Below are positions 21,473 to 28,055 of a stretch of 64,000 bases of DNA, one piece after another. The notes beneath the pieces are model-generated. The model saw only the letters and a list, made by a program, of their open reading frames with translations. It was not told the origin of the DNA and did no database searches. Positions within the stretch are counted from its first letter, which is position 1, and each line of letters starts with the position of its first letter. The stretch is from positions 1 to 64,000 of IMG/VR virus record IMGVR_UViG_3300009093_000034; one strand, given 5' to 3'. The position numbers and the translations under genes were made by a program.

Positions 21473-22011
21473 TACTTTACCTCGTAAAAGATCTTGGTTC
21501 CAGCTGGGTACTCAACACCTTCAAAGAAGGTAGATTGATTTAGTACCAAAAAAGGCAACTGAGGTTCGTGCTTAGGGTACGGAGCCACAGGAGAACCAAC
21601 GACATTGGCGAGATTTTCACTAGCAGATTGAACGTCTTCCAAGTTCTTCTTGGGATAGACAACGTTTAATTGAGCACTACGATCATTCACCCCATCTCCA
21701 CCAAACTCTGGTCCTAACTTTGCACCTTCAGGTGTGAAGAGGAAGTAATTGGCCCAAAATGAAAGGTCAGCTGCGTCAGAGTCAAAAGCTGTCTGTAGAC
21801 CCTTGAGAGCACTCACGAGAGGGTTCTCTTGGATCATACCAAACTCTTCGCTGGTAGTTCCTTGTGAGGAATTTTGAGGAGATCCTGGGATCTGAGATGG
21901 TCGATCTACAAAGTATCGCTGAGCAAACTCATCAACGTTCTCTCCTGTAGGAGGAAGAAAGTTGACGTCTTTCAGGAACTCAGCGATCGTAGATTCCTTA
22001 AAGCCTTTCAT
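21472..22011 (-). CDS. Hypothetical protein, possibly head-associated
   Basis: Starts MKGFKES; coupled by a TAATG overlap. Confidence 0.65.
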   Translation of the reverse strand: MKGFKESTIAEFLKDVNFLPPTGENVDEFAQRYFVDRPSQIPGSPQNSSQGTTSEEFGMIQENPLVSALKGLQTAFDSDAADLSFWANYFLFTPEGAKLGPEFGGDGVNDRSAQLNVVYPKKNLEDVQSASENLANVVGSPVAPYPKHEPQLPFLVLNQSTFFEGVEYPAGTKIFYEVK

Positions 22012-23693
22012 TACTTGTAAGCTCCAGCCTTTCCTAAGAGTCCTTGACCTTCGAACTCGTCCTTGTATGCTTTGAAAGCATACTGATCAAGTTCCTTGAG
22101 CCAAGCGTCATCGATCTCGTAGTACATGTTGTCAAGGCGATCTAACCATTTGTGATCTAGCTCACCTTCTTTGGCGTCTTCTTCTAATTGACCTTCTTCG
22201 TTACAATCATAGCAAGGAGCAGTTCCTTCACCGTGGCATTCTTCACAGTCGACTTGATCGATGTTTCCATCTTCGTCCTCGTCTTCAACTGTTCCTTCAC
22301 CATCGCATTCTGGACACTTTACATATCTTTTGTTGTGGCAAGAGTAACATTCTTCATGAACACCTTGAACAACATCAGCAATACTTTCAAAAATAGTGAA
22401 AACCTTTACTCCAGTATCGGTCTTAAAGATACCTTCTCTAGAAGCTAGTTCTAACATCTGGTCTTGAAGATCTGTGTCATAAGAGTTGTTGCTAAAGTAT
22501 CCTCGTTTCTCAGAGGCATACCCGTTATCAAGATACTGCATGATTCCACCATTACCGATCTGGTAGTTAGCAGCTCCAAAGAACACAACAATTGCTGCTT
22601 CATCTCCATAGGTATGTAGAATGTACTCAATGAACTCTCCCCAACTCTTGTCTTTAGCAGGACCGTTGTCTTGCCAATCTTCGTAACAAATGTCCATAAT
22701 GGTCTGGAGGAAGCCGTGTTCTTCACCACTCTTTGGGGTTGCCTTTAATTTAGAGACAAGGTTTTGGGTGATCTTTTCTTGAAGTCTTTTATCGTTCATG
22801 TTTGTTCCTTTTGTGGATTCTTCAAAATCTTCATTCAAAAACTCATTAGGATTCACTGCATTCAAGAAGTCTTGAGCCAAAAGAGTTGCTGCAGAATGAA
22901 CAATGCTTGCGTGGTCTTTTGCTAAGTGCCATCTTTTAGCATCTTCAATGAAAGAAACAATGGTTTCTAAGCTCACCATATTGTTGATCCAATTTCTAGT
23001 TTTGTCTTGGTTGTAGTCATCTTCTGAAAGAAGTTCAACTGCGTCATCAATAACTTCATCGACAATTTCATCATGCTCATGTCTAAATGAAGATTCTTCA
23101 AATCTAGTCTCGTGTTCAAAATCTTCAATCATGTCTTTTGGATCATTTAAGACTTCAAGAACTACTTCAGATAGCTCATCTGCATCAGACATGTTAGTAA
23201 TTCTTTCTACATAACTTTTAACAAAACGATCCAAACTCTTAGAGTTTTTAACCTTAGTTTTGTTTTTTATGATCATCTTGAAAACTTTTTTAACGTTTCT
23301 AATGATGTCGGCCATGTAGTTATTCCACTCATCATTCCATTCATTTACATCGTCTTCGTCTTGCTCAAAGTCCATGTTTTCAATTTTTCTTTCATGAGAC
23401 TTAAAGGCTTCGAGATCATCCTTAAGGGACTCGATAGCTATTTTGTCCAAGTTAGGTTGCATTCCGCCTCTAGCCTGCATAAGGTTCACCATAGAGTCGG
23501 AACCAAGTGATTCTGAAAGGAGATTAGAAAGAAGAGAATCTAAGGTGTTAAGTGCTTCATGAGCCTTGAAACCATGTACAAACATAGCCTTTCTTTGCGC
23601 GTCAGCTTTCTTCTTTGAACGGAATTTGTGTGGATGTTTTGGAGGATTATCTCCAACATTTTCGTAGCCACCGTCAACTTTCTCTGTGCCCAT
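22011..23693 (-). CDS. Acidic multi-domain protein with DMP19/DUF4375-like domain and DnaJ-type Zn finger
   Basis: ANYQIGNGGIMQYLDNG; four CxxCx(G)x(G)-type repeats; LDRLDNMYYE; ACTAATT motif and AAGGAG RBS upstream. Confidence 0.65.
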   Translation of the reverse strand: MGTEKVDGGYENVGDNPPKHPHKFRSKKKADAQRKAMFVHGFKAHEALNTLDSLLSNLLSESLGSDSMVNLMQARGGMQPNLDKIAIESLKDDLEAFKSHERKIENMDFEQDEDDVNEWNDEWNNYMADIIRNVKKVFKMIIKNKTKVKNSKSLDRFVKSYVERITNMSDADELSEVVLEVLNDPKDMIEDFEHETRFEESSFRHEHDEIVDEVIDDAVELLSEDDYNQDKTRNWINNMVSLETIVSFIEDAKRWHLAKDHASIVHSAATLLAQDFLNAVNPNEFLNEDFEESTKGTNMNDKRLQEKITQNLVSKLKATPKSGEEHGFLQTIMDICYEDWQDNGPAKDKSWGEFIEYILHTYGDEAAIVVFFGAANYQIGNGGIMQYLDNGYASEKRGYFSNNSYDTDLQDQMLELASREGIFKTDTGVKVFTIFESIADVVQGVHEECYSCHNKRYVKCPECDGEGTVEDEDEDGNIDQVDCEECHGEGTAPCYDCNEEGQLEEDAKEGELDHKWLDRLDNMYYEIDDAWLKELDQYAFKAYKDEFEGQGLLGKAGAYK

Positions 23694-23853: not shown

Positions 23854-26178
23854 ATGCTGATCACCAAAAAAGATGGTTCTAACCAGCCTTTTGATGAGAA
23901 CAAGGTTCTCAAAACCCTCAAGATAAGATCTGAGGGACTATCTGGAGTTAATCAAGATAAAATTTTCAAAGAGTTCACCAAGAACATCGCCGAAGGAATC
24001 TCAACGTCTGACCTAGAGAAGATGCTGATCCTTTCCGCGTCTTCATTGGCTGAAACTCACTTGGATTATGACAAGCTTGCCACTAGACTCTTCCTTCAGA
24101 AGATCTACAAAGAGGTTCTTGGCGGAACAGCTTCAGATGAAGAAAGAGACTCTGCTCACAAGCACGCTTTCATCCATTTCATTGACTCCTCTCCTCTTCT
24201 TGACGATAGAATGAGAAACTGCTTCGACTTGGTCAGACTCTCCAATGCTCTTGATCTTGAACAAGACAAGAGGTTCAACTTCCTTGGTCTCACAAGCATC
24301 TACGAGAAGCTTCTCATTCGTGATGAAAACGGCTTCGTCAAAGAAACTCCACAGATGTTTTTCATGCGCGTCGCTATGGGTCTTTGTCTTGAAGACGTGG
24401 ATGATTTCGTCCTTGATCTTTACGGGATCTACTCTCGTCATGAAGCCATCAGTTCAACCCCAACTCTCTTTGCTTCCGGCTTGAAGAAGGCTCAATTGTC
24501 TTCTTGTGCTGGTGGAGTCGTTACCGATACCACGGAGTCCATCTTCGGAACAGCTGAAGACTCTTTCAATCTTGGTAAGTGGAGCTATGGAATCGGTACC
24601 TCTGTTTCCAAGCTTCGTGCCATCGGAAGCACAGTTAAGTCCACAAGAATCCAATCCAGCGGAATCATCCCATTCCTTCAGATATACAACGCCATCTGTA
24701 ACTCGGTCAATCGAGGAGGTCGTAAGAGAGGAGCCATGTGCTTCTACCTTGAGAACTGGCACTATGAGACTGAGGACTTCATCAAGCTTCGCAGAAACTC
24801 TGGTGATGAGAGAATGAGAACCCACGATCTCAACACCGCTCTTTTCATCTCTGATGAGTTCATGAAGAGAGTTATGAGAGACGAGCAATGGATGCTCATC
24901 GATCCTAAGGAAGCCATTGACAACGGTTACGACCTCACAGAGCTCTCTGGAAGAGCTTTCTCTCAAGCCTACAAAGAACTTGAGAACCTAGCTAAGGCCG
25001 GTAAGATCAAGCTCTTCAAGTTCATCAAGGCTAAGGACCTTTGGAAGCAACAGCTCCTTAGCCTCTTCGAGACCGGACACCCTTGGGTCACGTTCAAGGA
25101 TGCTATGAACGTCAGGAACCCAAACCAGAACTCAGGAAACATCTACTCCAGCAACCTCTGTACAGAGATCGCTCAGAACGTTCTTCCAGATGCCTCGGGA
25201 GCAGGAGAGTATTTCAACTGTTTCTTGGCTTCTGCTAACCTCGGTGAGATGTTTCATCCAGAGACCCAGTTCGATGTTGAGAAACTTACCCACGCTGTTC
25301 GAATCTTGGTACGAGCTTTGGACAATGCAAATGATTTGAACTATTACCCCACAGAAGGTGTAAGAGCCGGTTCACAACGATACCGTTCTATCGGTGTTGG
25401 AGTTATGGGATGGCAAGACCTTCTATTTAAGAACAAGATTCCTTTTGATTCTCCTGAAGCTGTTGATCTTCTTGATCGAGTAGCTGAGGTTTGGAGTTAC
25501 GCTGCAATTGATGCTTCTGCGGCTCTTGCTGTTGAAAGAGGAAGTTACCAGAACTTTGAAGGAAGTCTTTGGAGTCAAGGAATTCTTCCAGTTGACACCT
25601 TGGCCATGCTCTCAGAGTCAAGAGACCTTCCATTGACCGTAGAGTCAACCACTCGTCTGGATTGGGACGTCTTGAGAGAGAAGGTAAAGAAGGGCATGAG
25701 AAACGGTTACGTTATGTCTCCTGCTCCTAACGCTTCCACCGCTCTTTACTTGGGAGTTTATCCAGCTACTGAGGCTCAATATGCCAACATGTACTCCAAG
25801 GAGAACATGCTCGGTAAGTTCTCTATCATCAACGAGTATCTTGTAGATGATCTAGCTAAACTAGAGGGAATTGACGTTGAAGAAGTAGTTCAGAAGATCA
25901 AGAACTCTCGAGGAGATCTAGCAAAAGCTGGAATCAAGGACGAGAAGATCCTTGAGCTTTACAGAAATGCTTTTGAGGTAGATCCATTGGCACAGGTCGA
26001 ACAAGCCAAGGTGCTTGCTAAGTGGATCGACCAATCACACTCCAGGAACATCTTCCTGGACACAAACAGTGGCAAGGTCTTGAATGATGTGTATCTTCAA
26101 GGTTGGTTGGGAGGTGTTAAGACCTTCTACTACTTGAGATCCAAGGCCGCCACATCAGCAGAGAACTCGACAGAATAA
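23854..26178 (+). CDS. nrdA: Class Ia ribonucleotide reductase alpha subunit with ATP-cone
   Basis: ITKKDG cone, TPQMFFMRVA, STPTLF, QLSSC, GGRKRGA, SSNLCTEI, NCFLASANL, PAPNAS, KTFYYLRS; the likely start is ATG 23854, not 23686. Confidence 0.95.
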   Translation: MLITKKDGSNQPFDENKVLKTLKIRSEGLSGVNQDKIFKEFTKNIAEGISTSDLEKMLILSASSLAETHLDYDKLATRLFLQKIYKEVLGGTASDEERDSAHKHAFIHFIDSSPLLDDRMRNCFDLVRLSNALDLEQDKRFNFLGLTSIYEKLLIRDENGFVKETPQMFFMRVAMGLCLEDVDDFVLDLYGIYSRHEAISSTPTLFASGLKKAQLSSCAGGVVTDTTESIFGTAEDSFNLGKWSYGIGTSVSKLRAIGSTVKSTRIQSSGIIPFLQIYNAICNSVNRGGRKRGAMCFYLENWHYETEDFIKLRRNSGDERMRTHDLNTALFISDEFMKRVMRDEQWMLIDPKEAIDNGYDLTELSGRAFSQAYKELENLAKAGKIKLFKFIKAKDLWKQQLLSLFETGHPWVTFKDAMNVRNPNQNSGNIYSSNLCTEIAQNVLPDASGAGEYFNCFLASANLGEMFHPETQFDVEKLTHAVRILVRALDNANDLNYYPTEGVRAGSQRYRSIGVGVMGWQDLLFKNKIPFDSPEAVDLLDRVAEVWSYAAIDASAALAVERGSYQNFEGSLWSQGILPVDTLAMLSESRDLPLTVESTTRLDWDVLREKVKKGMRNGYVMSPAPNASTALYLGVYPATEAQYANMYSKENMLGKFSIINEYLVDDLAKLEGIDVEEVVQKIKNSRGDLAKAGIKDEKILELYRNAFEVDPLAQVEQAKVLAKWIDQSHSRNIFLDTNSGKVLNDVYLQGWLGGVKTFYYLRSKAATSAENSTE

Positions 26179-26200
26179 AGGAAAAGGAAGGAGAAGAGGT

Positions 26201-26494
26201 ATGGTTAAGATCTACACCACCAATAGCTGCGCTGTTTGCAAGCGAGCTAAGACTGATATGCTAGTTAAGGGCATTGCATATGAGGAGCACAACGTCGAAG
26301 ACAACGAACAAGACTTTGACGTGATGATTGAGGCGACTGGAAAAACTGCCGTTCCTCAATTTGACATCGATGGAGAGTGGGTGGTAGGTTACAACTCTTC
26401 GGTCATTGAGAAGGCTTCACGAGATGAAGACGACTTTGAACTTGTTGGAGTAGGTGGACAAGAGTACGCAACTTGCGAATCTTGTGAAGGTTAA
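26201..26494 (+). CDS. Glutaredoxin/NrdH-like redoxin with C-terminal CxxC tail
   Basis: KIYTTNSCAVC, TAVPQFDIDGEWVVGYN, then an acidic linker and terminal CESCEG; strong RBS. Confidence 0.85.
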   Translation: MVKIYTTNSCAVCKRAKTDMLVKGIAYEEHNVEDNEQDFDVMIEATGKTAVPQFDIDGEWVVGYNSSVIEKASRDEDDFELVGVGGQEYATCESCEG

Positions 26495-26495
26495 C

Positions 26496-27497
26496 ATGGG
26501 AATTCTAGATATCCGAGATGAGATGGAGAACAAAGAACTCCATCGAAATCCATACCCACAATTTCTCAAACACTTTACCAACGGTGTAGCCAACAACTGG
26601 ACAGTTGCTGAGATCTCTCTTCAAGACGATCAAGAGCAATGGAACGTTCCTGGAAAGTTGACTGATGAAGAGAAGCAACTTGTTCTGAAGAACCTTAAGT
26701 TCTTCGGAGTTTGTGAAGCTCTTACCATGGACAACGTTGCTGTTGCTATCCTTCCTAGAATTCAAGACGGTTACGTGAGAATGGCATTGATTCGCCAAGC
26801 TTATGAAGAAGCTCTTCACTCTCAAACCTTCTTGACCATCGCTGAGTCTCTTTCCATTAAGATCTCCGACATCTATCAAGAGTACAAGGACACGCCTTCT
26901 GTTAAGGCCAAGATTGATTTTGTTAATTATCTGATTGGACAAACAGAGAAAGACGGTTTTGATATCACAACGATTGAAGGTAAGCAAGATCTTCTTCAAG
27001 ACATGATCGGGTTTTTCCAGATCCTTGAAGGAACCTTCTTCTTCACCAACTTTGCTCAATTGTTCTCTCTTCGTCGAAAGAACAAGATGAAAGGACTATC
27101 CAGCTTCATTGACTACATTGCAAGAGACGAATCTGTTCACATTGCTATCGGCCGAGACCTGATCAACATCATCATCAAAGAGTATCCCGAGATCTGGACT
27201 CCATCTTTTAGAGAAAAAATGAGTACATCTTTTGCAACCGCGGTTAGATTAGAAGATGCTTACTTAAACGATACTATTCCAGAGACTCTTCTAGGTCTTA
27301 ATCGAGAATCGTTTAAGGATTACATTCGATTCATTGCCAATCGAAGAATGAAAGGTATTGGTCTAGAAGGTCTTTGGCCTAACATGAAAAATCCTTTCCC
27401 TTGGATGAGTACAGAGAATGATCTCCCTACTGAAACGAACTTCTTCGAGTCTAGACCAAAAGAGTACAAAACTGGCGATGTCAACATGGACTTCTAA
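26496..27497 (+). CDS. nrdB: Ribonucleotide reductase beta subunit
   Basis: NNWTVAEISL..D, QAYEEALHSQTF, LEGTFFFTNF, YIARDESVH, ETNFFESRPKEY. Confidence 0.95.
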   Translation: MGILDIRDEMENKELHRNPYPQFLKHFTNGVANNWTVAEISLQDDQEQWNVPGKLTDEEKQLVLKNLKFFGVCEALTMDNVAVAILPRIQDGYVRMALIRQAYEEALHSQTFLTIAESLSIKISDIYQEYKDTPSVKAKIDFVNYLIGQTEKDGFDITTIEGKQDLLQDMIGFFQILEGTFFFTNFAQLFSLRRKNKMKGLSSFIDYIARDESVHIAIGRDLINIIIKEYPEIWTPSFREKMSTSFATAVRLEDAYLNDTIPETLLGLNRESFKDYIRFIANRRMKGIGLEGLWPNMKNPFPWMSTENDLPTETNFFESRPKEYKTGDVNMDF

Positions 27498-27529: not shown

Positions 27530-27796
27530 GTGAAATACACATTGACCTTAGACATGGCTTATGACGAAGCTGAAGACATCTTTGAATTTTTAGCACAAAT
27601 TGCTCCCTTAGGAGTTTGGACAATTCTATCTGAACGTCATAGTGCAGGTGGAGGTTGGCCTTCTTTTACTTTCGCTGCTGAAGATAAAGAAGCCTTGAAG
27701 AAACTTTATAGGATCTACAACGGTGGAGAAGCTGATGAAGAAGATGATGATTTCGATTCAGACTTTGAAGAGTTTTTTGAACAAGAGAACTCTTAG
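27530..27796 (+). CDS. Hypothetical acidic protein
   Basis: AGGAG RBS before GTG; ACTAATT at 27503. Confidence 0.7.
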   Translation: MKYTLTLDMAYDEAEDIFEFLAQIAPLGVWTILSERHSAGGGWPSFTFAAEDKEALKKLYRIYNGGEADEEDDDFDSDFEEFFEQENS

Positions 27797-28027: not shown

Positions 28028-28055
28028 GAAAAGGTTCCCGAAAGGGAACCTTTTT
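28028..28055. terminator. Bidirectional intrinsic terminator
   Basis: AAAAGGTTCCC-GAAA-GGGAACCTTTT between convergent genes. Confidence 0.85.

What the first reader, a model, noticed from the sequence alone, without database searches (positions are those of the whole stretch)
23854..26494. RNR alpha lacks its C-terminal shuttle cysteines, and the adjacent redoxin carries them instead
Seen: NrdA has all catalytic motifs (QLSSC, NLCTE, NCFL, YY) but stops 13 residues after YY (YYLRSKAATSAENSTE), with no terminal Cys pair. The next gene is a CAVC glutaredoxin/NrdH followed by an acidic linker and a terminal EYATCESCEG. It has its own strong RBS and is in a different frame, so simple readthrough does not join them. 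Known: class Ia alpha subunits use a flexible C-terminal CxxC/CxxxxC tail to re-reduce the active site, and that tail is in turn reduced by Trx/Grx. Inference: the tail now works in trans on the redoxin, making the phage RNR dependent on a private reductant. This probably arose by fission of an alpha-Grx-tail fusion.
Basis: partly seen in the sequence, partly recalled or inferred. Interest (0 to 1): 0.7.

Follow-up and report, generated by a model that had tools for sequence, protein, structure and literature searches.

The report
RNR shuttle cysteines moved onto glutaredoxin
In this soil jumbo phage the large subunit of ribonucleotide reductase has lost the flexible cysteine tail that normally recharges its active site, and that tail sits instead at the end of a small glutaredoxin encoded by the next gene, an arrangement conserved in a small phage clade and not described before for this enzyme class.

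Summary
nrdA (23854-26178) has all the catalytic motifs and stops 14 residues after YY without any cysteine. The next gene (26201-26494, own Shine-Dalgarno, +1 frame) is a 97-aa glutaredoxin with CAVC, a disordered acidic linker and a terminal CESCEG.

This is not chance or an assembly error. Among relatives, 133/150, 116/119 and 76/76 NrdAs end in a Cys pair. Three other contigs (NrdA 48-78% identical) also carry a tail-less nrdA followed by a ~97-99-aa grx, and the two Grx that could be read end CASCEG and CESCQ. The four NrdAs form one 100%-supported clade. An independent metagenome contig matches the nrdA stop and spacer exactly.

The Grx-linker-CxxC module aligns end to end with the C-termini of natural NrdA-Grx-tail fusions (S-TIM5, PhiW-14, C48C1, nACB2, S-CBWM1).

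Best reading: one small protein carries both the shuttle cysteine pair, acting in trans, and the redoxin that recharges it. This mechanism is inferred; the one docking prediction gave no verdict.

Corrections: the beta subunit is class Ic-like (Phe at the radical Tyr site), not Ia. No fused ancestor was found inside this NrdA clade.

It is a new variant of known kinds: Grx-RNR fusions and the class II NrdJa/NrdJb split.

The parts
23854..26178 (+). nrdA, the catalytic (alpha) subunit of a class I RNR, 774 aa: ATP-cone, all-alpha domain and barrel. It has the active-site Cys pair, the thiyl Cys and YY, but no C-terminal Cys pair.
   Evidence: The Pfam barrel domain scores 3.3e-150. The best PDB match, 5im3, aligns only up to residue 918 of 963.
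26128..26178 (+). The truncated C-terminus of NrdA, YYLRSKAATSAENSTE plus TAA. The break lies just after the conserved A-E-(K/N)-S-T motif that ends the ordered body.
   Evidence: L003 (AERSSE*) and P0008 (AEKSTQ*) break at the same point; L106 breaks a few residues earlier (SATNNNG*).
26179..26200 (+). Intergenic spacer carrying the Shine-Dalgarno sequence (AAGGAAGGAGAAGAGG) for grx. No terminator lies between nrdA and grx.
26201..26494 (+). grx-tail gene, 97 aa: a glutaredoxin fold (residues 1-73), a flexible acidic linker (74-91) and a terminal Cys pair.
   Evidence: In the AF2 model the fold has pLDDT ~90 and residues 76-91 are below 50.
26228..26239 (+). Redox-active site of the Grx fold, CAVC (C10, C13).
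   Evidence: These cysteines are invariant in alignments A1 and A2.
26423..26449 (+). Linker motif DEDDFELVG. It may be a docking element for the detached tail.
   Evidence: The same kind of motif occurs in the L106 Grx linker (PDDFLSGI) and in the stand-alone tail ORF of L012 (DDDDFLSGI). DDF[LE] occurs in 0 of 307 covalent NrdA tails.
26474..26485 (+). Terminal shuttle-type Cys pair, CESC (C92, C95), followed by EG and the stop codon.
   Evidence: The pair is invariant in A1 and A2, and the ending matches those of canonical NrdA tails.
26496..27497 (+). nrdB, the radical-generating (beta) subunit, 333 aa, class Ic-like. It starts 1 nt after the grx stop codon.
   Evidence: The motif is EEALHSQTF, with Phe where class Ia has the radical Tyr, and the first ligand is Glu in CEAL. 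The best PDB matches are 6y2n and 1syy.
27530..27796 (+). An 88-aa, very acidic ORF of unknown function, last in the same transcription unit.
   Evidence: no Pfam match. It is included only as operon context.
28028..28055 (.). A 12-bp bidirectional terminator-like hairpin that closes the nrdA-grx-nrdB unit.

Best explanation
The phage encodes a three-gene class I (Ic-like) ribonucleotide reductase. In it, the C-terminal redox shuttle of the alpha subunit has been moved onto a separate 97-aa protein.

Proposed cycle, all steps inferred:
1. After each turnover the active-site cysteines of alpha (C218 and C456) form a disulfide.
2. The flexible tail of the Grx protein (C92-x-x-C95, on a ~19-residue disordered linker) enters the active site and reduces that disulfide.
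3. The oxidised tail is then reduced by the CAVC site of the same or a second Grx molecule.
4. CAVC is recharged by a host system, either glutathione or thioredoxin reductase. Which one is unknown.

The acidic DEDDFELVG stretch in the linker may tether the carrier to alpha. That step is speculative.

Shown here: the anatomy, the rarity of a tail-less NrdA, the conservation and single origin of the arrangement, the likeness of the Grx-tail module to the C-terminal modules of fused NrdA-Grx-tail proteins, and purifying selection on the tail.

Inferred: that the tail acts in trans, that the electrons flow in this order, and that the enzyme depends on this protein.
For: 1. Alpha is complete apart from the tail. 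In relatives the tail is nearly universal: 133/150, 116/119 and 76/76.
2. The tail-less nrdA plus grx arrangement occurs in four contigs whose NrdAs form one 100%-supported clade, with internal path lengths above 1 change per site. The three Grx sequences available all keep CxxC at the very end: CESCEG, CASCEG and CESCQ.
3. The module aligns end to end with the Grx-linker-CxxC(E/Q)(G/A) modules that follow the YY motif in fused NrdAs of C48C1, PhiW-14, nACB2, S-TIM5 and S-CBWM1. Many marine metagenome fragments carry the same module.
4. For linker plus tail, pN is 0.11 against pS 0.64. This equals the Grx domain (pN 0.108) over a divergence where synonymous sites are saturated.
5. The tail sits on a disordered linker, as expected of a swinging arm.
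6. The three genes form one operon with no internal terminator. grx has its own SD, and nrdB starts 1 nt after the grx stop.
7. It is the only Grx in the complete 305.8-kb genome, which holds only one sub-threshold thioredoxin-like match.
8. Precedent: class II NrdJa/NrdJb keeps the electron-shuttling C-terminal domain on a separate gene (PMC5704485; 10.1101/2022.04.23.489257). Fused Grx domains are proven RNR reductants (PMC6187632).
9. From established knowledge: E. coli NrdA tail Cys-to-Ser mutants work with DTT but not with thioredoxin or glutaredoxin (Mao et al. 1992, as cited in 10.1101/2022.04.23.489257).
Against: - There is no experimental or structural evidence for binding. The only complex prediction gave no verdict, so nothing speaks for or against docking.
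- A free 97-aa carrier loses the high local concentration of a covalent tail.
- CAVC is an unusual Grx active site, and the glutathione-binding motifs are only partly kept (TAVPQ; VGYNSS instead of GGYDD). The upstream reductant is therefore unknown.
- Other tail-less NrdAs exist with no tail gene in the sequence available downstream (L099; about 100 nt in L011). Class I alpha subunits may therefore have other ways to be reduced.
- The clade is tiny, with four contigs in all public data searched.
Confidence: 0.62

Rival explanations
1. The Grx fold reduces the alpha active-site disulfide directly with its CAVC site. Loss of the tail makes the site accessible. The terminal CxxC is a leftover or serves another purpose, such as resolving mixed disulfides or regulation.
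For: - Direct use of thioredoxin by an RNR is reported for a class III enzyme (Wei et al. 2014, as cited in PMC9531940).
- Tail-less NrdAs with no tail gene in the available downstream sequence exist (L099).
- The Grx fold is intact.
Against: - The terminal pair is invariant, and the linker plus tail are as constrained as the fold.
- The fused homologues keep the pair at the extreme C-terminus behind the Grx. That placement is pointless if the Grx acted directly.
- From established knowledge, the class I active site is too narrow for a folded redoxin.
Confidence: 0.13
2. Alpha is re-reduced by a host factor, either a small dithiol or a host redoxin. The phage Grx-tail is an accessory general thiol reductant, not dedicated to RNR.
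For: - The Burnim et al. preprint suggests small-molecule reductants for class II RNRs without C-terminal cysteines (10.1101/2022.04.23.489257).
- Phage glutaredoxins are common outside RNR operons.
Against: - In all four clade members the grx sits between nrdA and nrdB or directly after nrdA.
- Its tail has the canonical NrdA ending.
- The co-occurrence of a tail-less alpha with a tail-bearing Grx would be an unexplained coincidence.
Confidence: 0.1
3. The four cysteines (CAVC plus CESC) bind a metal or an Fe-S cluster. The protein would then be a sensor or cluster carrier rather than an electron shuttle.
For: - Some glutaredoxins bridge Fe-S clusters (established knowledge).
- Class II RNR C-terminal domains contain a zinc finger (PMC5704485).
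Against: - The tail sits on a long linker predicted to be disordered.
- The pair has the sequence and position of the class I redox pair.
- There is no likeness to the class II cysteine-rich domain.
- Fe-S glutaredoxins normally lack a dithiol CxxC of this type.
Confidence: 0.05
4. The two genes are really one. The split would be an assembly indel, or a programmed frameshift or readthrough would produce a fused NrdA-Grx-tail protein.
For: - The grx frame is open for 21 codons upstream of its ATG and overlaps the end of nrdA.
- A TARA contig (L096) shows a fused-type gene broken by a simple frameshift.
Against: - An independent contig matches the nrdA stop and spacer exactly.
- Four contigs share the split but have different spacers (22, 10, 29 and 42 nt) and different frame relations (+1, +1, -1 and 0).
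- Each grx that could be read has its own SD.
- There is no slippery site, and the TAA-A stop context is strong.
Confidence: 0.04

Closest known systems
NrdA with a C-terminal glutaredoxin fusion in phages. Rozman Grinberg et al. 2018 (PMC6187632, Table S1) list Cyanophage S-TIM5 and Delftia phage phiW-14. C48C1, nACB2, SH-Ab 15599, S-TIM54/61/66 and S-CBWM1 were also seen here.
   Same: The module order is the same: alpha body, then Grx fold with CxxC, then linker, then terminal CxxC(E/Q)(G/A). The Grx-tail part aligns end to end.
   Different: - In those phages it is one polypeptide; here there are a stop codon, a spacer and a separate SD between the body and the Grx.
- The fused alphas belong to other NrdA subclasses and lack an ATP-cone.
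- Grx identity is only 23-35%.
- No fused form was found in the window's own clade.
Class II NrdJa + NrdJb, e.g. in Pseudomonas aeruginosa (PMC5704485; 10.1101/2022.04.23.489257)
   Same: The C-terminal domain that carries the electron-shuttling cysteines is encoded by a separate gene next to the catalytic gene.
   Different: - It is a different RNR class.
- NrdJb is a 150-220-aa zinc-finger/IscU-like domain, not a redoxin carrying a short tail.
- There is no sequence relation between the two.
Grx::NrdB fusion of Facklamia ignava, also found in Francisella and several viruses (PMC6187632)
   Same: A dedicated glutaredoxin is physically tied to the RNR operon or enzyme and serves as its reductant.
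   Different: There the Grx is fused to beta, and it reduces a C-terminal pair that is still on NrdA. Here the Grx is free and carries the pair itself.
NrdH-redoxin of class Ib operons, and T4 NrdC
   Same: A small, operon- or phage-encoded redoxin with a Grx-like fold, dedicated to RNR.
   Different: - NrdH and NrdC have no C-terminal Cys tail, and their alpha subunits keep the pair.
- The window protein scores below the NrdH cut-off (36.5 against 85.75 bits).
Genes-in-pieces NrdA of Aeromonas phage Aeh1 (PMC3045599)
   Same: A phage nrdA is split into separately translated pieces that must reassemble. There, new peptide tails act as interaction domains.
   Different: The Aeh1 split lies inside the catalytic core and was caused by a homing endonuclease gene. 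Here the cut lies at the boundary between body and tail, and no mobile element is present.
Class Ic RNR of Chlamydia trachomatis (PDB 1syy, 4d8f)
   Same: NrdB has Phe at the radical-Tyr position and Glu as the first metal ligand.
   Different: No Grx-tail protein is described for that system. The metal content of the phage protein is untested.

Membership tests
Class I RNR catalytic subunit (NrdA) | Ten-stranded barrel domain with an N-terminal all-alpha domain | tested here: met
   PF02867 3.3e-150 and PF00317 3.8e-14. The protein aligns with 5im3 over residues 3-773.
Class I RNR catalytic subunit (NrdA) | Thiyl-radical Cys with Asn and Glu (NLCTE), the active-site redox Cys pair, and the YY radical-transfer pair | tested here: met
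   C436 in NLCTE, C218 in QLSSC, C456 in FNCFL and Y759-Y760.
Class I RNR catalytic subunit (NrdA) | A C-terminal redox-active Cys pair on a flexible tail. PMC6187632 states that all class I RNRs have it. | tested here: not met
   The protein ends 14 residues after YY with no Cys. Among relatives the pair is present in 133/150, 116/119 and 76/76.
Glutaredoxin (PF00462) | Thioredoxin-fold domain scoring above the Pfam cut-off, with an N-terminal CxxC and a cis-Pro (VP) motif | tested here: met
   46.6 bits against 22.9. CAVC and AVPQ are present, and the protein aligns with E. coli Grx3 (1fov) at 4.6e-10. The AF2 model shows a Grx fold.
Glutaredoxin (PF00462) | The canonical CPYC active site and the glutathione-binding GG(Y/C)DD motif | tested here: inconclusive
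   The protein has CAVC and VGYNSS instead. The sequence cannot show whether it uses glutathione.
NrdH-redoxin | A match above the NCBIfam NrdH cut-off, with the C(V/M)QC and WSGFRP motifs | tested here: not met
   TIGR02194 scores 36.5 bits against a cut-off of 85.75. No WSGFRP motif is present.
NrdA-Grx-tail fusion proteins (S-TIM5 / PhiW-14 type) | A Grx fold followed by a linker and a terminal CxxC(E/Q)(G/A) | tested here: met
   In alignment A1 the columns C10, C13, VPQ, C92 and C95 are invariant.
NrdA-Grx-tail fusion proteins (S-TIM5 / PhiW-14 type) | The Grx-tail module is covalently joined to the alpha body | tested here: not met
   A TAA stop, a 22-nt spacer, an SD and a +1 frame separate them. 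An independent contig confirms this.
Class Ic RNR beta subunit | Phe in place of the radical Tyr (position i+4 after the first His ligand), and Glu as the first carboxylate ligand | tested here: met
   EEALHSQTF and CEAL align with C. trachomatis EEAVHTHTF and AESL.
Class Ic RNR beta subunit | A Mn/Fe heterobinuclear cofactor | not testable with these tools
   This needs metal analysis of the purified protein.
Split class II RNR (NrdJa/NrdJb) | A B12-dependent catalytic chain, with a separate cysteine-rich zinc-finger domain protein | tested here: not met
   The alpha is class I and has an adjacent nrdB. The carrier is a Grx, not a cysteine-rich domain. The likeness is one of principle only.

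The most novel reading that the evidence does not exclude
Detaching the shuttle tail may be a recurrent solution in class I RNR, one that needs a small docking motif.

- The Grx-tail proteins of the window clade carry DEDDFELVG (window, L003) or PDDFLSGI (L106).
- An unrelated 42-aa tail-only mini-protein lies behind a tail-less, intein-bearing NrdA in L012. It carries DDDDFLSGI followed by KACSIDNPDCEACQ.
- All of these share an acidic DDF[LE] motif that is absent from 307 covalent tails.

If the motif tethers free tail carriers to alpha, these would be portable redox-shuttle peptides. The tail would then be a separable, exchangeable subunit of the enzyme.
Probability: 0.25. Interest if true: 0.75.

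Novelty: new variant of a known kind. Interest (0 to 1): 0.6.

Why it matters
The field's stated rule is that every class I RNR alpha carries its own C-terminal cysteine pair (PMC6187632). [quoted passage not shown]

Here a conserved natural system breaks that rule in an informative way. The shuttle pair and the redoxin that recharges it sit on one 97-aa protein, separate from the catalytic subunit.

- The system allows tail entry, tail re-reduction and redoxin specificity to be studied with separable parts.
- It shows one end of an evolutionary series: tail on alpha, then Grx inserted before the tail, then Grx-tail set free.
- If dependence is real, the phage enzyme would be insulated from, or selectively coupled to, the host's thiol systems.

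The clade is small and the mechanism is untested, so this is a lead for RNR biochemistry rather than a new principle.

Tried and rejected
- **Complex prediction.** NrdA(88-774) with Grx-tail scored 0.07, under the mark of 0.34, and gave no verdict. It is not evidence either way.
- **Structure prediction with A1.** It was redone with admissible sequences (A2).
- **DNA search of the phage collection.** The operon found no match.
- **Searches for more split-type members.**
  - Two protein searches, with P0002 alone and with the A1 profile, added only L003 as a true member.
  - Viral-contig scans with P0002, P0001 and P0394 found only the same phage or unrelated glutaredoxins.
  - The one metagenome scan found only ordinary glutaredoxins without tails.
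- **P0008 contig.** Its DNA could not be fetched. The neighbouring 97-aa Grx is therefore known only by length and Pfam family.
- **Short tail-bearing 'glutaredoxins'.** The hits proved to be fragments of fused NrdA genes (L097, a scaffold gap) or a frameshifted fused gene (L096). L095 is too short to tell.
- **Programmed frameshift or readthrough.** Rejected, because the frame relations differ among clade members and each grx has its own SD.
- **Other tail-less NrdAs.**
  - P0118 (L099) has no tail or Grx gene downstream.
  - The P0099 contig gave no DNA.
  - The P0037 contig ends about 100 nt after the nrdA stop.
- **L012 mini-ORF.** Relatives of the L012 NrdA in IMG/VR keep covalent tails. 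The mini-ORF itself was too short to use as a query.
Full report
**Context**

The window is the first 64 kb of a complete 305,833-bp jumbo phage genome with direct terminal repeats and 43.7% G+C. It was recovered from rhizosphere and soil metagenomes. No sequenced phage resembles it at the DNA level.

**The observation**

- nrdA runs from 23854 to 26178 (774 aa). It has an ATP-cone, the all-alpha domain and the barrel.
- Its best solved relative is Pseudomonas aeruginosa NrdA (5im3). That alignment runs to residue 918 of 963, so the last ~45 residues of a normal alpha are missing.
- All catalytic residues are present: C218 in QLSSC, C436 in NLCTE, C456 in FNCFL, and Y759-Y760.
- The protein ends YYLRSKAATSAENSTE.
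- After TAA comes a 22-nt spacer with AAGGAAGGAGAAGAGG. A 97-aa ORF then starts at 26201 in the +1 frame.
- That ORF is a glutaredoxin (PF00462, 46.6 bits). It has a CAVC site, an acidic linker (SRDEDDFELVGVGGQEYAT) and the end CESCEG.
- nrdB starts 1 nt after the grx stop codon.
- There is no terminator inside the unit. A strong hairpin closes it at 28028-28055.

**More than chance, and not an artefact**

- Of the 150 nearest NrdA cluster representatives among 1.84 billion proteins, 133 end in a Cys pair and 11 look truncated. Only 6 have a complete body without a pair.
- 116 of 119 relatives of P0008 have the pair, as do 76 of 76 complete IMG/VR relatives.
- A contig from an unrelated study (X4, a mine metagenome) covers 25946-26201 without a single difference. 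The probable source run holds the whole stretch at depth 12.7.

**The same split in three other contigs**

| Contig | NrdA | NrdA end | Spacer | Grx |
|---|---|---|---|---|
| L003 (GCA_037025285.1) | 78% identical to the window | ...AERSSE | 10 nt | 99 aa, GTG start, CAVC, ends ...YETCASCEG |
| L106 (ENA) | P0275, carries an intein | ...SATNNNG | hairpin and SD | 99 aa, CSAC, ends ...YPDDFLSGIMVNEEEPEVCESCQ |
| P0008 contig (ENA) | 48% identical to the window | ...AEKSTQ | 29 nt | 97 aa, no DNA available |

- In a tree of 74 NrdAs these four form one clade with 100% support and long internal branches. The arrangement therefore arose once and has been kept.
- Between the window and L003, synonymous sites are saturated (pS 0.64-0.78). 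Yet pN is 0.11 for linker plus tail, the same as for the Grx fold.
- The frame relation of grx to nrdA is +1, +1, -1 and 0 in the four contigs. This argues against a conserved recoding event.

**What the tail is**

- CESCQ (L106) is the commonest ending of NrdA in this family. CE.CEG also occurs as an NrdA ending.
- A tblastn search with the window Grx covered the protein's full length only inside the large-subunit gene of phage C48C1.
- That protein is an alpha body, then a Grx (CPWC), then a linker, then ...DECRACEG.
- The same architecture is present in Delftia phage PhiW-14, Acinetobacter phages nACB2 and SH-Ab 15599, cyanophages S-TIM5/54/61/66 and S-CBWM1. It also appears in many marine metagenome fragments.
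- In the joint alignment both Cys pairs and VPQ are invariant, and the window protein aligns end to end.
- Rozman Grinberg et al. 2018 list Grx:NrdA fusions for S-TIM5 and phiW-14 in their Table S1, and state that all class I NrdAs have the C-terminal pair. I found no description of the split form in five literature searches.

**Mechanism**

- The AF2 model gives a confident Grx fold for residues 1-73. The linker is disordered (residues 76-91 have pLDDT below 50), so the Cys pair sits on a swinging arm.
- The most economical reading follows. The arm does what the covalent tail does in other class I enzymes, namely reduce the C218-C456 disulfide. It is then reduced by CAVC, within one molecule or between two, which in turn draws on a host system.
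- This is inference from homology and from established RNR chemistry. The only docking prediction gave no verdict.
- The source of electrons is open. The protein is nearest to Grx3 and to YruB-type glutaredoxins, and it fails the NrdH cut-off. However, it has CAVC and only partial glutathione-binding motifs.
- It is the only Grx in the genome, which holds only one sub-threshold thioredoxin-like match.

**Origin**

One TARA contig even shows such a fusion broken by a frameshift (L096).
- No fused form lies in or near the window's clade, and the sister clade has ordinary covalent tails.
- The window's Grx is no closer to the fused modules (23-35% identity) than to free glutaredoxins.
- Insertion of a grx gene, with its own start signal, into the linker of an ordinary nrdA would give the same result. 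The data do not decide between the two routes.

**Correction of class**

NrdB has EEALHSQTF, with Phe where class Ia has the radical Tyr, and Glu as the first ligand. Its best solved relatives are 6y2n and C. trachomatis R2c (1syy, 4d8f). L003 and L106 share the Phe. The enzyme is class Ic-like, not Ia.

**A lead beyond the finding**

- Tail loss happened at least three times among the 74 NrdAs in the tree.
- In L012, an intein-bearing NrdA stops at TAA. Eleven in-frame codons later, behind an AGGAAG, starts a 42-aa ORF: MSQVDSSSSVDMNDDDDFLSGITPQDVPKACSIDNPDCEACQ. This is a tail-only mini-protein.
- Its DDDDFLSGI matches PDDFLSGI in the L106 Grx linker and resembles DEDDFELVG in the window.
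- DDF[LE] occurs in 0 of 307 covalent tails, and [DE]DF in 2.
- The motif may be a docking element that detached tails need. This is untested.

**Comparison with known systems**

- The nearest relatives by descent are the NrdA-Grx-tail fusions. The defining feature 'one polypeptide' is not met here.
- The nearest in principle is class II NrdJa/NrdJb, where the shuttle domain is a separate gene. That is another RNR class with an unrelated domain.
- Also related in spirit are the Grx::NrdB fusion of F. ignava, NrdH and T4 NrdC, and the genes-in-pieces NrdA of phage Aeh1.

**Verdict**

The feature is real and conserved. It is a new variant of known kinds, and it matters mainly to RNR enzymology.

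Noticed in passing
window 26496-27497 (motif at 26805-26831): NrdB has Phe at the position of the radical tyrosine (EEALHSQTF) and Glu as the first metal ligand. Its best PDB matches are 6y2n and Chlamydia trachomatis class Ic R2 (1syy). L003 and L106 share the Phe. The RNR is therefore class Ic-like, not Ia.
   Followed up: partly
L012:7559-7723: An intein-bearing phage NrdA (P0047) ends at an in-frame TAA. Eleven codons later a 42-aa ORF with its own SD encodes only a linker plus the canonical tail (...DDDDFLSGITPQDVPKACSIDNPDCEACQ). This is a stand-alone shuttle-tail mini-protein. A relative (P0037, L011) stops at the same point. Closer IMG/VR relatives (L108, L109) keep covalent tails.
   Followed up: partly
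window 26423-26449; L106:4255-4278; L012:7634-7660: An acidic DDF[LE] motif (DEDDFELVG, PDDFLSGI, DDDDFLSGI) is shared by all detached tail carriers that could be read. It is absent from 307 covalent NrdA tails. The window NrdB ends ...GDVNMDF, so mimicry of the beta tail is conceivable.
   Followed up: partly
L096:461-1316: A TARA contig carries a fused-type NrdA-Grx-tail gene broken by a single frameshift just before the Grx. This is either an assembly error or a very recent fission.
   Followed up: no
ENA contig of P0099 (no DNA fetched): A 1300-aa tail-less NrdA has DNA polymerase III beta-clamp domains (PF00712, PF02768) in front of its ATP-cone, according to precomputed Pfam hits. This would be an unusual clamp-RNR fusion.
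   Followed up: no
L003:5691-5915 and L106:4324-4584: Two clade members have an extra small ORF (74 and 86 aa) between grx and nrdB. The two ORFs are unrelated to each other, and the L003 ORF, the only one scanned, has no Pfam match. The window has none; its nrdB follows grx by 1 nt.
   Followed up: no
window 22011-23693 (- strand): A 560-aa ORF diverges from nrdA. It has a very acidic middle and a C-terminal run of CxxCxGxG-like repeats. Its DnaJ zinc-finger match is weak (E 0.0013, below the cut-off). Its function is unknown.
   Followed up: no
window 27530-27796: An 88-aa, strongly acidic ORF with no family match is the last gene of the nrdA-grx-nrdB unit, before the terminator at 28028-28055.
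   Followed up: no
L106:3984-4008: In L106 a perfect GC-rich hairpin (GCGGGGTCTTAAGACCCCGC) lies between the nrdA stop and the grx SD. The window has no counterpart. It may tune the relative expression of the two genes.
   Followed up: no
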